Source: Pocillopora damicornis (lineage: Eukaryota). Taken from it: DNA of 64,000 nt. Where the stretch lies: contig NW_020846737.1 of the NCBI RefSeq assembly GCF_003704095.1, forward strand, positions 248,001 to 312,000, written 5' to 3'. The notes under the pieces are model-generated. The model made no database searches, had not been told where the DNA came from, and saw only the letters and a program-made list of their open reading frames with translations. A program made the translations under genes and the position numbers. Positions 1-15,434 of the stretch are shown here, piece after piece; position 1 is the first letter of the stretch; every line of letters begins with the position of its first letter.

Positions 1-659
1 CACTGGAATGCCTTTGGTCTGGCTAAATCGTAAACTTACGGATGCGACATCTGTAATCCTGGAAAACAACTTCAGCTTTCAAAAGGCTTCCCCCAAAGTG
101 TATGAAATTGCCAAACCTGGGAGGATTTTACTGAGAGTAAAAGCATGGCAGGACTATCTTTCGTTTGAATTAACGTCAGCTTCTCAATGGTGTATTGTTG
201 GCTCTGGAATTTGTTCCTCTTGTGACTCAAACGTTGTAAATGACTTTACAAACAGTACAGGTACCATGTACTGGGGAGGCAGTATTTCAGAAAGTATTAT
301 AATTAATATCTTACATTCGCAGTGGCAAGTCTCTGCTATCGACTCGTTGTTTATATTTGGATACACGAGCTATAAAGAGCGACGAGAAATAACTTCTAAT
401 GGCTACGCCCTGAGCTTTAATGGTACAACTGCTTCAACAGGAATTTTGAATGCTTTTGTCAAAGACTTCACTATTCAACTGTTTGTCAAAGTTCACTCAT
501 CTGGAGGTACAATCCTTTCTTACTCAAATAAATTTACATTTGCCCTAGTGAACGATGTCCGAGTCAAAATCTTCCAAGGTGGAGCTTCGTACGACATGGG
601 AATTACACTACCTTCTGGAACTTGGGTACTAGTGTCTATCGCGTACAGAGCTTCAACAG
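1..659 (+). CDS. Internal exon (5' end outside the window) of the giant VWD/LamG/C8/EGF repeat membrane protein; encodes the end of a VWD and the start of a LamG/pentraxin-like domain
   Basis: Open frame from position 2 with VWD C-terminal motif (GSGICSSCDSNVVNDF) and LamG start (GYALSFNGT...FTIQLFVK) matching the downstream modules. Donor ACAG|gtaaat at 659/660 (phase 1) joins in frame to acceptor ttttcag|GA at 1020/1021. Confidence 0.9.
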
Positions 660-1020
660 GTAAATATACTGGATGTACATATTGCTCGGTCTTTTAGTTC
701 TTCATCCATCATTGAAACTGGATTAAGTTTATGAGATGTTAAGTCGTGCTTGTTGATTGAGCTCAACCTGAACATTAACTACAATGAGAGAAATACATGG
801 TTTTGATTATTTGCTAGTGTTTGTCGGCAAGGGCGTGTAATTACAAATGATCACCTAGATGACAGATTATCACGAGATAACTTTGTACTGACTACTTTTA
901 AATATGAATTCTTGCTTGGTATATTTCTTAGCATTTCAAACATTAACTGTGAGAATTTAATGAATCAAAAAAGGTTCCACTTTTATTGTAATAAAGCCTG
1001 TTTTTTTTATTTGTTTTCAG

Positions 1021-13000: not shown

Positions 13001-15434
13001 TGGCTCACGTTGTAATACGCGATGCGTATTTGGGTATCCCAGGCCAGATATAAACTCAACGGATGGCGTTTCTTGCAAGTGCGAACAAAACTACTGGGGA
13101 GTGGACTGTGCAAATCTATGTCCGGGTGGGCTAAGGGAAACTTGTAACGGACACGGTGTTTGTAGTGTAACTAATGGTACCTGCGAGTGCGAACCACACT
13201 GGAAAGGGAATATATCGGCTGAATATAACGCTCCAATCGATGAAAACAATTCCGTCTCGCCAATACCATGTAGCAGGTGCACACCCGGTTGGACAGGAGC
13301 TGACTGTGCGATTGCAGAGGACTCCTCCATACTGGACAATTCCTCTATCCCTAGAATAGCTATAAACTTTGGCGATCCTCATTTTACGAGTGTGACAGGG
13401 GTAAACTTTCACTTCGAAGCTCCCGGTGCGTACCATCTTTTCAACTCATCAATTGTAGATGCACAGGTGCTGATAGTTCCATGTAACAACAGAGTGTCCT
13501 GTCGACGAATCAGTGAGGTTTCCCTCCGCACCTCGAAAACAGAGCTGTCGGTTCGTTACAACGATTTTGAGACAGTGGTAAGCAGTTTATTTGATAAAAC
13601 AAGCAACACCTCCAAGGAGCTTTCCAAGTCTGATGAATGGGTCGAGGATGCAGATATCCGATACCGTTGGCTAACAGATAACATCCTGGAAGTTCGCATC
13701 CAAGATGAAATTCAGTTTAACATTCTATCTTATTACGGTACCATTGGAACGGCTATTGAAGTTTTAAAACAGAGAGATCAGACAGATGGCATCTGTGGCG
13801 AGAAGGAGAGCAGTTGGATACGACAACAAGGGAACCAAAGCCTTACATCGGAAAACCAAATAGCTGATACTTCTAACAATGACACAACAGATCAGCAAGG
13901 CCTTACTCAAGCAACGATCCAAAAAAGACTCATTACACGGTTCAGAATCATGGAGAAGGACAATTCCTTGACGACAAAATATGCCTCGCGCAGTTATTCT
14001 GGGGCTGGCTACATGTTGGAGTTCTCGTCTGGTAACACTGCTGTTATGTACGCAAGCAACACAAGTTTGCCAGTTCTCGATGAGTTTACTATTGAAATTT
14101 GGGTCTGTTTGACGAATGTAGGCGAAAGCGTTGCTCGATTCTGTTCCTCAGATCAGAGAAACAACACTGAACCCGTCACTGGCAGTCACGCTGTTTTCTC
14201 TGTTGTCACCGCTATTGGGGACTTTGCAATAGTTTGCAACGACGGACTGCAGGTGAAATGGGACAAGGAGAAATTTATAACGGATATTAATCTTTACGAG
14301 GGAGTTTGGACTCATTTAGCTGTAACGTGGAGGACGATCGATGGTCGAATGCAAGCGTTCGTCTATTCCAACGGAAAGCATCGTCAATCAACAACATATG
14401 GGATAAAAAATGGAAAGCAATTCTCTTTCAATGGTCTGTTTATTCTAGGACGTTACATGCGAGGCTATATGGTAGACAGTGAATACGACATGCTTGGAGC
14501 GTTGGACGAGTTAAAGGTGTGGCAATATGCAAAGACGATGGAACAAATCAGGGCGTCCATGAGCGTCAAGTTCCAGGACTACCGCGAAGGACTGGTGTTA
14601 AACGTACCTTTTGACGAAGGAATGGGGCAAACGACGGTGGGGCACCTTTATAGTCCGATTTCTGTTGAAGTAGCGCTCTCTCTTTTCGAGGCCCTAGTCG
14701 TAAATGTGACCAATATTCATCTGTTTATTCATTCTGGAGACTACCCCGGATGGGCTCCGTCAGGGGTGCACTTGAGTCCCTTAGCGAACTACAGTCTAGC
14801 GTTCCTTAACAAAACTCTGGAAGGGAAGGCCTTAGAGAAGTGTTACGAGTCGTTTTATGAAGGAAAGCTACAGGAACATTGCAGTCCGAAACTGGTATCA
14901 CAAGCCCTGTTTTACTACGAGTCTTGCCTCGCGGACATTGCCGATTCAGGCAGTCTTGCACACAGCAAGCTTTCTGTAAGTCTCTTCGGCTTTTACTGCC
15001 AAAAAGTCCTTGGAATTAAAGAGTGCTTGTTGCACGGAACCTACGACGCTTTCCTACGCTGTCCAGGCGACGACGAAAAACAAACCAAATTCACTCCACT
15101 AGAGATAATTGTTACGACTGTATCCTCACTACTCTTCCTTTTATTTCTGCTTATCATACTTATCCTGGTGTGTCGACGAAGAAAGCGCAGAAAGTCCGAA
15201 GTGGAGCAGATTTACCTCCATGAAGCTGGAGGTGAAAGATCGCATAAGTACGTCGCTGAAGATGAGGGTGACCACCCTCAAGCATATTCCATGAGGCAGA
15301 TGTTGGACGAGTACGACTTTGAACCGGACATGGATGATAGCCCACATGATACACCAAGCGTTGTGCGAAAACCGCTGGTTCGAAATCCTGCTGGCGGTGT
15401 GCTGCCTGAAGGAGAGGAGGAGAGTGCTGTGTGA
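1021..15434 (+). CDS. Terminal 14,414-nt coding exon of a giant type-I transmembrane protein: tandem [VWD-LamG/pentraxin-C8-like-EGF] modules, TM helix, cytoplasmic tail
   Basis: Uninterrupted ORF. LamG motif G-x-(I/L)-D-E-x-x-x-W...W-x-F-(N/D)-E-G recurs 8 times (~1190, 3025, 4895, 6795, 8745, 10620, 12485, 14505). Each is followed by a C8-like segment (FY..AC...A(Y/F)AD.C...WP...LC) and, except the last, EGF-like repeats (C.C..G.WG..C...CPGG....C..HG.C....G.C.C) and a VWD (F..FDG..F....GE(F/Y)). Hydrophobic helix IIVTTVSSLLFLLFLLIILILVC at 15105-15173 followed by RRRKRRK. Stop at 15434, AATAAA at 15550. Confidence 0.93.

What the first reader, a model, noticed from the sequence alone, without database searches (positions are those of the whole stretch)
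1..15434. Giant membrane-anchored protein with a LamG/pentraxin domain inserted between VWD and C8 in each of eight modules
Seen: a ~630-aa module repeated 8 times (first VWD truncated by the window edge, last module lacks the EGFs), ending in one TM helix; about 5,020 aa are visible and the N-terminus lies further 5'. Known: in VWF, gel mucins, FCGBP, tectorin and zonadhesin, VWD is followed directly by C8 and TIL/EGF. Here a LamG/pentraxin-like fold splits VWD from a C8-like unit that keeps only about 5 cysteines. Inference: an uncharacterised glycocalyx, adhesion or multivalent lectin-type surface filament, possibly used in the mucus layer, skeleton attachment or microbe/symbiont recognition.
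Basis: partly seen in the sequence, partly recalled or inferred. Interest (0 to 1): 0.75.

Follow-up and report, generated by a model that had tools for sequence, protein, structure and literature searches.

The report
Giant membrane protein of LamG-split D-assemblies
This is the expressed C-terminal part of a huge, single-pass membrane protein built from nine ancient repeats of a mucin/von-Willebrand-type "D assembly" with a lectin-like LamG domain inserted in each, a family shared with sea urchins and acorn worms whose function nobody has yet studied.

Summary
Window 2-15434 (+) encodes 5,023 residues in two exons. The GT..AG intron at 660-1020 is spliced out in RNA contigs of 3 studies. The product is a series of ~620-aa modules, then one TM helix and a 86-aa tail.

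Pfam finds VWD, Laminin_G_3 and teneurin-type EGFs. The Cys-poor linker has no sequence match worth the name. Folded alone, its 13 best PDB matches are all C8 modules of MUC5B, VWF, MUC2, MUC5AC and FCGBP (Z 7.4-9.5). The whole-module model superposes on complete D assemblies while skipping the LamG.

New here:
- There are nine modules, not eight; one lies upstream of the window.
- Acorn-worm and sea-urchin proteins also have nine, partly in positional orthology.
- The gene is single-copy.
- Only the membrane-proximal VWD keeps GDPH, and its first strand has no cysteine.
- The tail ends in a conserved E-S/T-x-Φ motif.
- Upstream lie ~60 EGFs and ~74 kb of unknown Gly-rich repeats, probably the same gene.

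Function is inferred: a cleaved, cortex-linked adhesion or tether filament. The link to vertebrate VWDE could not be tested.

The parts
2..659 (+). 3' end of an upstream exon. It encodes the C-terminal part of the VWD and the N-terminal part of the LamG of module M1. The exon starts upstream of the window, in an open frame from contig position 245677.
   Evidence: Frame 2 is open. It matches M6 residues 17-305. An RNA contig runs to position 656/659 and then jumps.
660..1020 (+). Intron, 361 nt, GT..AG, phase 1.
   Evidence: Sequence. The joint 'skips 361, GT..AG' is seen in RNA contigs of X1, X5 and X10 and not in the DNA-like run X15.
1021..15434 (+). Giant terminal exon of 14.4 kb (4,803 codons plus stop). 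It holds the rest of M1, modules M2-M8, the TM helix and the tail.
   Evidence: ORF. RNA contigs cover 1018-6000 without gaps. Single ORFs of 4,777-4,807 aa occur in related species.
1021..1976 (+). Module M1, C-terminal part: end of LamG, C8-like domain, 3 EGFs.
   Evidence: Matches M6 residues 303-629 at E 6.8e-72.
1977..3806 (+). Module M2: VWD 1995-2444, LamG 2559-3194, C8-like 3195-3563, EGFs 3537-3806.
3807..5657 (+). Module M3: VWD 3831-4277, LamG 4443-5066, C8-like 5067-5423, EGFs 5397-5657.
5658..7568 (+). Module M4: VWD 5688-6155, LamG 6336-6968, C8-like 6969-7328, EGFs 7302-7568.
7569..9524 (+). Module M5: VWD 7593-8057, LamG 8298-8918, C8-like 8919-9287, EGFs 9261-9524.
   Evidence: Pfam VWD did not reach E<=1 in this module; the assignment rests on the alignment.
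9525..11411 (+). Module M6, the one that was modelled: VWD 9546-10019, LamG 10167-10793, C8-like 10794-11168, EGFs 11142-11411.
   Evidence: AF2 models. Fold searches.
11412..13319 (+). Module M7: VWD 11439-11915, LamG 12036-12656, C8-like 12657-13013, EGFs 12987-13319 (with a 20-residue insert).
13320..15089 (+). Module M8, membrane-proximal and divergent: VWD 13347-13820, LamG 13989-14738 (best Pfam LamG_3 match, E 2.3e-15), C8-like 14739-15023, no EGFs.
   Evidence: The M8 modules of six proteins form one clade with support 100.
13371..13382 (+). GDPH, the only one among the nine VWDs. It lies at the canonical place before the T-x-(F)-x-G strand. There is no cysteine between the last EGF cysteine and this motif.
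   Evidence: The motif is conserved in relatives.
15105..15173 (+). Transmembrane helix IIVTTVSSLLFLLFLLIILILVC, followed by RRRKRRK (positive inside; type I topology).
15174..15431 (+). Cytoplasmic tail of 86 aa, acidic, with 4 Tyr. The last four residues E-S-A-V (15420-15431) fit a class I PDZ ligand.
   Evidence: An E-[ST]-x-[VLIM] C-terminus is kept in P0001-P0006, P0018, P0021 and P0031. A weak Cadherin_C_2 hit at E 0.0053 is below the cut-off.

Best explanation
SHOWN. The window holds the last ~5,000 residues of an expressed, single-copy gene for a type I membrane protein.
- Its membrane-proximal part is nine tandem modules, M0-M8 (M0 lies upstream of the window).
- Each module is a D assembly of the VWF/mucin kind, with VWD packed against a C8-like helical domain.
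- Each is split by a LamG/pentraxin-like beta sandwich inserted between VWD and C8.
- Each ends with three teneurin/tenascin-type EGFs instead of TIL-E. M8 has no EGFs.
- The nine-module array is old. Hemichordate and sea-urchin proteins have nine modules too, and M0, M7 and M8 group by position rather than by species.

INFERRED.
1. The protein is a long, stiff, non-mucin surface filament. It has 69 N-glycan sequons, no PTS region and no cystine knot, so it does not polymerise like VWF.
2. The single GDPH in the membrane-proximal VWD is cut autocatalytically in the secretory pathway, as in MUC4, FCGBP and RGM.
3. The first strand of that VWD carries no cysteine, so the giant ectodomain would stay on a 685-aa membrane stub only through the non-covalent beta-sheet. 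That junction could hold under normal load and let go under force or acid.
4. The conserved C-terminal E-S/T-x-Φ couples the stub to PDZ scaffolds under the membrane.
5. The nine LamG domains offer a multivalent, probably glycan- or matrix-binding face.

Most likely role: a mechanical tether or adhesion filament between an epithelial surface and extracellular matrix or substrate, inherited from the common ancestor of cnidarians and bilaterians. In a coral it could serve tissue-to-matrix attachment.
For: Architecture:
- Pfam VWD, Laminin_G_3 and EGF_Teneurin.
- AF2 module model, pLDDT 69.7.
- D assemblies (VWF D3 6n29_B at Z 20.5 with 275 aligned residues; MUC5AC at Z 20.8) align over model residues 3-622 and skip the LamG. 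LamG residues 217-438 match PAPP-A, 4dqa and pentraxins at Z 17-19.5.
- The linker folded alone matches C8 modules in its top 13 rows and in the Foldseek top 7, though only at E~1-2.

Expression and splicing: RNA contigs from 3 studies.

Single copy: all 12 strong matches in the genome lie in this one locus.

Nine modules elsewhere: P0007, P0020 (Ptychodera), P0027 (Lytechinus), P0042 and P0045, i.e. 5 of 12 proteins examined; the other 7 are truncated, fragmented or expanded.

Positional orthology: M8 clade support 100, M0 99, M7 96. Position labels need 16 changes against a shuffled mean of 39.7, with 0 of 200 shuffles as low (quick tree).

Not a gel mucin: S+T+P is 19.4%, and only six Pfam families were found, with no TIL, CTCK or PTS.

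GDPH:
- It occurs once in nine VWDs, with no beta1 cysteine.
- It is kept in P0001-12, 14, 15, 18, 21, 24, 25, 28 and 31, down to 31% identity.
- Autocatalytic Asp-Pro cleavage of GDPH in VWD domains, including membrane-bound MUC4, and the beta1 disulfide of FCGBP are described in PMC10880436 (sections 1, 2.4 and 2.7 read).

Tail motif: conserved in 9 proteins with a complete C-terminus.
Against: - No experiment or expression map bears on function.
- The LamG ligand is unknown, and no binding residues were examined.
- GDPH is not kept in the deuterostome orthologues (Ptychodera has GNIH; Lytechinus has none), nor is the PDZ-type end. Cleavage and scaffold coupling may therefore be features of the cnidarian branch only.
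- In FCGBP a Gln 14 residues after the Asp helps cleavage, and Q-to-E gave mixed cleavage (PMC10880436, section 2.4). Here that position is Glu, by my own count.
- The AF2 models rest on only 8 sequences. The VWD/C8 packing is predicted, not observed.
- The helical-domain Z values (up to 9.5) lie in the range where the tool warns that helical bundles can match by chance. The argument rests on 13 of 13 top rows being C8, not on Z alone.
- The PDZ class rule is recalled, not tested.
Confidence: 0.55

Rival explanations
1. It is a multivalent lectin-type pattern-recognition receptor. The nine LamG/pentraxin-like domains bind microbial or symbiont glycans, and the rest of the protein is only a stalk.
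For: The LamG fold matches pentraxins (SAP, CRP, PTX3, NP1 at Z 17.3-17.7) and a Bacteroides carbohydrate-binding protein (4dqa, Z 19.5). Nine copies would give avidity. LamG is conserved as well as the other domains (mean identity to Ptychodera 0.36).
Against: - Fold similarity shows no ligand.
- The family is single-copy here and strictly conserved in module number over very long time. That is unlike the fast-evolving, expanded immune receptor families.
- All four domain types are conserved about equally, so the LamG is not singled out.
Confidence: 0.15
2. It is a cell-cell or cell-matrix signalling molecule of the VWDE/teneurin kind. In vertebrates VWDE is a secreted blastema factor. Here the EGF arrays would carry the activity, with the D assemblies as spacers.
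For: The EGFs are of teneurin type (PF23106, PF25024). VWDE is described as VWD plus such EGFs and is required for limb regeneration (PMC7390686, passages; PMC9117669, passages). The homologues' linker carries Pfam PF26129, whose name I recall as referring to Vwde; this is recall only.
Against: No vertebrate VWDE sequence could be obtained, so homology beyond shared domain types is untested. VWDE is reported with one VWD and as secreted. This protein has nine VWDs and a TM helix.
Confidence: 0.15
3. It is a coral skeletal-organic-matrix or biomineralisation protein, shed into the calcifying space.
For: Ectodomains of many TM proteins occur in coral skeletons (PMC4890752, passages). [quoted passage not shown] GDPH would provide a release site.
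Against: - Identity of that listed protein with this gene was not tested, because no sequence was available.
- The 'EGF and laminin G' skeletal proteins are aligned with neurexin by their authors, so they are probably another gene.
- The family predates coral skeletons and exists in non-calcifying animals.
Confidence: 0.1
4. It is a secreted, disulfide-polymerising gel former like VWF or the gel mucins.
For: It has tandem D assemblies with structural similarity to VWF, MUC2, MUC5AC and MUC5B.
Against: It has a TM helix and a cytoplasmic tail. Pfam finds no TIL, E, CTCK or VWC, and there is no PTS region. The C8-like unit has only ~5 cysteines.
Confidence: 0.04
5. It is an assembly artefact or a dead gene.
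For: None, beyond the unusual size of the exon.
Against: The 4,840-codon frame is open. It is spliced and present in polyA RNA of 3 studies. Intact ORFs of 63-99% identity occur in other assemblies.
Confidence: 0.01

Closest known systems
Uncharacterised giant proteins of Ptychodera flava (P0020, 6,778 aa), Lytechinus pictus (P0027, 6,375 aa), Diadema antillarum (P0044) and Branchiostoma belcheri (P0026), and single-ORF relatives P0001-P0019
   Same: They share the module (VWD-LamG-C8-like-EGF), teneurin-type EGFs and an 'AWFGY' domain before the first module, and one TM helix. P0020 and P0027 have the same number of modules, nine. M0, M7 and M8 are positionally orthologous.
   Different: The deuterostome proteins lack GDPH in the last VWD and have different, longer tails without the E-S/T-x-Φ end. 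All are unannotated, so they give no functional information.
D-assembly proteins: VWF, MUC2, MUC5AC, MUC5B, FCGBP (and, by recall, otogelin, tectorin, zonadhesin)
   Same: The VWD and C8 folds and their mutual arrangement match (Z ~20 over ~275 residues). The assemblies are repeated in tandem. GDPH occurs in some VWDs.
   Different: A ~210-aa LamG domain lies between VWD and C8. Three EGFs replace TIL-E. The C8-like unit has ~5 instead of 8 cysteines (the 8 is recalled). There is no PTS, CTCK or VWC. The protein is membrane-anchored.
[quoted passage not shown]
   Same: VWD combined with teneurin-like EGF repeats, as described in PMC7390686 and PMC9117669. Single-module relatives of this family with an N-terminal region, one module and a long EGF tail exist in Nucella (P0173, 1,619 aa), Owenia (P0134) and Dreissena (P0183).
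   Different: VWDE is reported as secreted with one VWD. Neither paper mentions LamG or C8 in VWDE ('laminin' and 'concanavalin' have 0 occurrences in PMC7390686). Sequence relationship was not testable here.
MUC4 / SUSD2 / RGM type membrane-proximal, GDPH-cleaved VWD
   Same: A GDPH-bearing VWD sits close to the membrane of a large surface protein. MUC4 is cleaved there into two subunits (PMC10880436, introduction).
   Different: No NIDO or AMOP domains are found. Here the VWD is part of a LamG-split D assembly.
PAPP-A LamG-like module, pentraxins, laminin LG domains
   Same: The fold of the inserted domain matches (Z 17-19.5, rmsd 2.7-3.1 A over ~190 residues), and Pfam gives Laminin_G_3 and a weak Pentaxin hit.
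   Different: Identity is 15-22%. No oligomeric pentraxin ring is implied. The ligand is unknown.

Membership tests
D-assembly proteins (VWF / gel mucins / FCGBP) | VWD domain | tested here: met
   Pfam VWD at E 3.6e-45 on the ORF, 5 stretches. It is found in 6 of 7 modules at E<=0.036. Structural match.
D-assembly proteins (VWF / gel mucins / FCGBP) | C8 module packed against the VWD | tested here: met
   Met by predicted structure only. The linker alone gives C8 modules in its top 13 rows, Z 7.4-9.5. The whole module aligns to VWD+C8(+TIL) of VWF D3, MUC2 and MUC5AC over model residues 3-622. By sequence, Pfam C8 matches 1 of 8 linkers at E 0.027 and the PDB profile search gives 0 hits.
D-assembly proteins (VWF / gel mucins / FCGBP) | C8 directly follows VWD; TIL and E modules follow C8 | tested here: not met
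   About 210 aa of LamG lie between VWD and C8. Pfam gives EGF_2, EGF_Teneurin and EGF_TEN, and no TIL, at E<=1.
Gel-forming mucins / VWF polymers | PTS (mucin) domains, and C-terminal cystine knot and VWC for polymerisation | tested here: not met
   Pfam finds only six families on the ORF, none of these. S+T+P is 19.4%. The protein ends in a TM helix and tail.
VWDE | VWD plus teneurin-like EGF repeats | tested here: met
   The feature is as described in PMC9117669.
VWDE | Sequence or profile homology to vertebrate VWDE over the VWD-to-EGF region; single VWD; secreted | not testable with these tools
   No vertebrate VWDE sequence was returned. PF26129 is not in the local Pfam. The nine VWDs and the TM helix differ from the published description.
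Conserved nine-module VWD-LamG-C8-like-EGF membrane proteins (unnamed; carry PF26129) | Same module order, nine modules, last one without EGFs, one TM helix | tested here: met
   All 52 module-bearing hits list PF13385, and nearly all list PF26129.
GDPH-autocleaved membrane VWD proteins (MUC4-like) | GDPH between the first two VWD strands | tested here: met
   Motif at nt 13371-13382, aligned to the pre-'T-x-F-D-G' position of the other VWDs. Actual cleavage was not tested.
GDPH-autocleaved membrane VWD proteins (MUC4-like) | NIDO and AMOP domains before the VWD | tested here: not met
   Neither appears.

The most novel reading that the evidence does not exclude
The 5,000 residues in the window are only the membrane-proximal quarter of one ~100-kb gene (contig positions ~161.5-263.4 kb). 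The gene would encode a protein on the order of 20,000 residues:
- about 30 copies of an unclassified ~410-aa Gly-rich (beta-solenoid-like) repeat;
- about 60 teneurin-type EGFs;
- an unknown 'AWFGY' domain;
- nine LamG-split D assemblies;
- a force-sensitive GDPH joint, a TM helix and a PDZ-binding end.

It would be one of the largest animal proteins. It would be an ancient metazoan surface tether whose bilaterian orthologues are all mis-modelled as N-truncated 'uncharacterized proteins'.
Probability: 0.35. Interest if true: 0.8.

Novelty: new variant of a known kind. Interest (0 to 1): 0.58.

Why it matters
D assemblies are the building blocks of mucus and of von Willebrand factor, and their evolution and plasticity are under active study. 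This family shows three things:
- A D assembly can accept a whole LamG domain between VWD and C8 and still be predicted to keep the VWD/C8 packing.
- Nine such units have been kept in order since before cnidarians and deuterostomes split.
- The array is membrane-anchored rather than polymerised.

The family gives structural biologists a natural test case for D-assembly plasticity. It gives cell biologists an unstudied, conserved giant surface protein with a predicted self-cleaving joint and scaffold-binding tail. For coral biology it is a candidate for tissue-matrix attachment. If vertebrate VWDE proves to be a one-module descendant, the unnoticed LamG and C8-like domains would bear on how that regeneration factor works.

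Tried and rejected
1. Naming the linker by sequence failed.
- Local Pfam gave nothing at E<=1 on whole modules.
- Only 1 of 8 isolated linkers gave a weak C8 hit.
- The PDB profile search gave 0 hits.
- PF26129, listed for the homologues, is not in the local library.
- Structure prediction settled the question instead.

2. Reaching vertebrate VWDE failed.
- A two-module query returned 1 hit among 8,000 candidates.
- The Nucella single-module protein as query returned 4 hits, none named VWDE.
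- Both Atlas searches gave only generic LamG, crumbs or neurexin clusters at 0.78-0.81.
- The cluster look-ups gave no names for the close relatives, and 'hypothetical' or 'VWFD domain-containing' for the single-module proteins.
- The VWDE question is therefore left open.

3. [quoted passage not shown] I rejected it as unlikely, because its authors align it with neurexin. This was not tested by sequence.

4. Paper searches for the architecture found nothing.
- 'VWD' + 'Laminin_G_3' + 'EGF' returned 0 papers.
- Lang et al. 2016 has no occurrence of VWDE, laminin or LamG.
- The search was too broad to be of use.

5. The Gly-rich repeat and the 'AWFGY' domain had no Pfam hit at E<=10. The repeat had no PDB hit at E<=1.

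6. The careful tree did not finish in 300 s. The quick IQ-TREE tree was used.
- Rows included: 9 window pieces (M1 only as its second-exon piece) and 9 modules each of P0007, P0020, P0027, P0042 and P0045.
- Rows left out: P0026, P0044, P0046, P0084, P0029, P0021 and P0018, whose modules are truncated, fragmented or expanded.

M1 was always handled as two exon pieces, and the upstream exons were searched one by one.

Full report
WHAT IS THERE

The + strand of window 1-15434 is almost wholly coding. Frame 2 is open over 2-697. Frame 3 is open from 912 to a stop at 15432-15434, 4,840 codons.

The sequence shows a donor CAG|GTAAAT after 659 and an acceptor TTTTCAG|GA before 1021. Contigs of three RNA runs from three studies (X1, X5, X10; polyA or cDNA libraries) skip exactly these 361 nt with GT..AG ends. 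The near-identical DNA-like run X15 keeps them.

One RNA contig of 15,765 nt covers the window from its start to 6000 and reaches beyond both ends of the laid stretch. The gene is therefore transcribed and spliced.

Module M1, which the intron splits, was always analysed as two pieces.

THE REPEAT

Motif positions show a period of 610-652 residues. The seven modules that lie wholly in the big exon align with 18-34% identity to the first one, and 21-36% with the upstream module added. These are old duplications, not a recent array.

Pfam on the whole ORF finds six families:
- VWD, E 3.6e-45
- Laminin_G_3, E 7.3e-38
- EGF_Teneurin, E 4.5e-22
- EGF_TEN
- EGF_2
- Pentaxin, E 8.3e-6

Per module, VWD and Laminin_G_3 are each seen in 6 of 7 modules, and three EGFs in modules M2-M7. 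The last module has no EGFs. It is followed by a 23-residue hydrophobic helix, RRRKRRK and an 86-residue acidic tail. This indicates a type I membrane protein.

The ectodomain part in the big exon has 69 N-glycosylation sequons and 174 cysteines. S+T+P is only 19.4%, so there is no mucin (PTS) domain.

THE LINKER IS A C8-LIKE DOMAIN AND THE MODULE IS A SPLIT D ASSEMBLY

The ~120 residues between LamG and the EGFs have five conserved cysteines and almost no detectable sequence relative:
- no Pfam family at E<=1 on whole modules;
- Pfam C8 in 1 of 8 isolated linkers at E 0.027;
- no PDB chain at E<=10 with a profile.

An AlphaFold2 model of module M6, built on the eight modules as alignment, has mean pLDDT 69.7. 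It shows a beta domain (residues 9-147), a beta sandwich (222-432), four to five helices (455-533) and small EGF-like elements.

The linker folded alone has pLDDT 80. Against 48,161 PDB representatives, its 13 best matches are all C8 modules:
- MUC5B 605-704, Z 9.5
- VWF 1040-1129, Z 9.2, and VWF 567-650, Z 9.2
- MUC2 D3 1035-1119, Z 8.9
- MUC5AC
- the MUC2 C-terminal D assembly
- FCGBP, Z 7.4-7.7

These matches have rmsd 2.0-2.9 A over 72-88 residues. The first unrelated row has Z 6.3. Foldseek ranks MUC2 D3 and VWF D'D3 first as well, but only at E~1-2. The tool warns that helical bundles reach such Z by chance. The argument is the unanimity of the top rows plus the next result.

Complete D assemblies align to the whole-module model over residues 3-622, with 260-296 aligned positions at Z 18-21. 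These are VWF D3 6n29_B, MUC5AC, MUC5B, MUC2 D1 and D3, and FCGBP. The alignment covers VWD, C8 and the start of the Cys-rich tail together, while skipping residues ~215-438.

That skipped part alone matches other folds:
- PAPP-A LamG, Z 19.2, rmsd 2.9 A
- a Bacteroides carbohydrate-binding protein, 4dqa, Z 19.5
- pentraxins, Z 17.3-17.7

Each module is a VWD-C8 D assembly with a LamG/pentraxin-like domain inserted between VWD and C8, and with EGFs where VWF and mucins have TIL and E. The packing is predicted from a shallow alignment and needs an experimental structure.

THE GENE IS LARGER THAN THE WINDOW

The window is positions 248001-312000 of a 384-kb contig. The frame that enters the window is open for 774 codons upstream and holds a further complete module, M0. 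The protein therefore has nine modules.

A six-frame search of the whole 234-Mb assembly with M6 finds 12 strong matches, all in this locus. There is one weak LamG-only match elsewhere, at E 1.1e-4. The gene is single-copy.

Further upstream, on the same strand, lie the following:
- an unclassified domain, 'AWFGY...', with no Pfam hit at E<=10;
- several open frames of teneurin-type EGFs, for example 11 EGF_Teneurin stretches in one 799-codon frame;
- copies of a ~410-residue Gly-rich repeat, from about contig position 236 kb back to about 161.5 kb. It has an autocorrelation peak at 408-412 residues and 52 phmmer matches, all on the + strand. It has no Pfam or PDB relative.

One open frame (contig 235695-237386) contains both a Gly-rich repeat and EGFs. 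The order EGFs, 'AWFGY' domain, EGF, first VWD is contiguous in the Ptychodera and Lytechinus proteins. One gene of ~100 kb and on the order of 20,000 residues is therefore plausible, but I could not show it with RNA. One search counts 25,094 residues in + strand open segments of 100 aa or more from 161 kb on. Overlapping frames and non-coding segments are not removed, so this is an upper bound only.

RELATIVES

A word-seeded search restricted to proteins of 2,662-8,470 aa gave 59 hits among 5,677 candidates. Of these, 52 carry the module. They fall into two groups:
- Single ORFs of 4,777-4,807 aa at 63-99% identity. The giant exon is therefore conserved in related species.
- Named proteins at 25-30% identity from Ptychodera flava, Branchiostoma belcheri, Lytechinus pictus, Diadema antillarum and Lamellibrachia satsuma. 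All are called uncharacterized or hypothetical.

The exhaustive profile search found 544 cluster representatives at E<=1e-30 and 5,084 at E<=1e-10. The looser figure includes proteins that share only LamG or EGF. Single-module relatives with long EGF tails occur in Nucella, Owenia and Dreissena.

An HMM of the module finds nine modules, the last without EGFs, in P0007, P0020, P0027, P0042 and P0045. That is 5 of 12 proteins examined. The other seven are truncated ORFs, fragmented models or, for P0084, an expanded array of at least 13.

In a quick maximum-likelihood tree of 54 modules, the position labels need 16 changes. The minimum possible is 8, the shuffled mean is 39.7, and 0 of 200 shuffles were as low.
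- The M8 modules of all six proteins form a clade (support 100).
- The M0 modules of the window, P0007, Ptychodera and Lytechinus form a clade (99), and so do their M7 modules (96).
- The middle modules resolve less well.

The nine-module array thus predates the split between this lineage and deuterostomes.

All four domain types are conserved about equally. Mean identity to Ptychodera is VWD 0.29, LamG 0.36, C8-like 0.35 and EGF 0.45.

TWO FEATURES NEAR THE MEMBRANE

GDPH occurs once in the nine VWDs, in M8 at nt 13371-13382. It sits at the canonical place before the first conserved strand.

The motif is kept in 20 relatives down to 31% identity: P0001-12, 14, 15, 18, 21, 24, 25, 28 and 31. 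It is not kept in Ptychodera (GNIH) or Lytechinus.

Yeshaya et al. 2024 (PMC10880436; I read the abstract and sections 1, 2.4 and 2.7) report the following:
- GDPH in VWD domains is cleaved autocatalytically between Asp and Pro.
- MUC4 is cut into two subunits this way.

In M8 there is no cysteine between the last EGF cysteine and GDPH, whereas M1, M2 and M4 have one in that strand. If cleavage happens, the giant ectodomain would be held to a 685-residue membrane stub only non-covalently.

A caution applies. The position 14 residues after the Asp is a Gln in FCGBP, and changing it to Glu gave mixed cleavage. Here it is Glu, by my count.

Second, the tail ends in E-S-A-V. E-[ST]-x-[VLIM] ends the nine relatives that have a complete C-terminus: P0001-6, P0018, P0021 and P0031. 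That this is a class I PDZ ligand is my recollection of the rule, not a test.

HOW IT MOST LIKELY WORKS

Shown:
- It is an expressed, conserved, single-copy, type I membrane protein.
- Its membrane-proximal 5,700 residues are nine LamG-split D assemblies.
- It has none of the parts that make VWF and the gel mucins polymerise or form gels.

Inferred:
- It is a long surface filament.
- It is self-cleaved at a non-covalent joint next to the membrane.
- It is tied to the cell cortex through its tail.
- It presents nine LamG faces to a matrix or glycan partner.

I take adhesion or mechanical tethering of an epithelium to matrix or substrate as the most likely role, with about even odds. The rivals are a multivalent lectin receptor, a VWDE/teneurin-like signalling molecule and a skeletal-matrix component. 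All three remain open. A secreted polymer and an artefact are contradicted.

COMPARISON WITH WHAT IS KNOWN, AND NOVELTY

The closest characterised proteins are the D-assembly proteins, but two of their defining features fail: C8 directly after VWD, and TIL-E.

VWDE shares VWD plus teneurin-type EGFs (PMC7390686 and PMC9117669; passages read). Neither paper mentions a LamG or C8-like part. I could obtain no VWDE sequence, so membership is untested.

The homologues already carry a Pfam model on the linker (PF26129). I recall its name as referring to Vwde, but the model is not in the local library. Database curators have therefore seen the domain.

I found no paper that describes the architecture, the nine-module family or its function:
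- 'VWD' + 'Laminin_G_3' + 'EGF' returned 0 papers.
- 'vwde' returned 162 papers, of which I inspected the 25 listed.
- Lang et al. 2016 on the evolution of mucins and FCGBP has no occurrence of VWDE, laminin or LamG.

I rate it a new variant of a known kind. The finding is of real interest to people who work on D assemblies, extracellular matrix evolution and cnidarian epithelia, but it is not categorically new.

Noticed in passing
upstream of the window: own contig C3372 ~161,500-236,100 (+), loci L017-L024, L003, L004: About 74 kb of + strand open frames hold a ~410-aa Gly-rich repeat (GGSGGSILI..., GGAGGRIAVH...), probably a beta-solenoid. phmmer gives 52 matches, all on the + strand. The repeat has no Pfam or PDB relative. 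One open frame (235695-237386) runs from such a repeat into EGFs, so it is probably the N-terminal part of the same gene.
   Followed up: partly
L002:6370-6966 (+), just before module M0: An unclassified ~200-aa domain ('...AWFGYHNKNPHNVYL...') lies between the long EGF array and the first module. It is conserved in Ptychodera, Lytechinus and P0045 and has no Pfam hit at E<=10.
   Followed up: partly
L003/L002, contig ~236,000-245,000 (+): Several exons of teneurin-type EGFs, roughly 60 in all; one 799-codon frame has 11 EGF_Teneurin stretches. All homologue gene models start inside this array, so they look N-terminally truncated.
   Followed up: partly
window 660-1020: The only intron in the nine-module region. 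It is absent in the 49%-identical relative P0007, whose single ORF runs from M0 into M8.
   Followed up: partly
P0084 (7,675 aa, JGI) and P0029: In another lineage the array is expanded to at least 13 modules with internal partial modules.
   Followed up: no
window 15420-15431: The C-terminal E-S-A-V is conserved as E-[ST]-x-[VLIM] in nine relatives. It looks like a PDZ-binding end. It is absent in the deuterostome orthologues.
   Followed up: partly
window 45598-46389 (+) and 58556-59596 (+): Two further open frames of 263 and 346 aa, acidic and Ser-rich, with low complexity. They are probably exons of neighbouring genes and were not examined.
   Followed up: no
window 37028-37127, 41864-41963, 47826-48169, 50541-50739: Four runs of N (assembly gaps or masked stretches). 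They were left alone.
   Followed up: no
own contig C3372 ~154,460-158,880 (+): Open frames of 420 and 604 aa lie just upstream of the first Gly-rich repeat. Their composition is different, so they probably belong to the neighbouring gene. This would put the 5' end of the giant gene near 160-161.5 kb.
   Followed up: no
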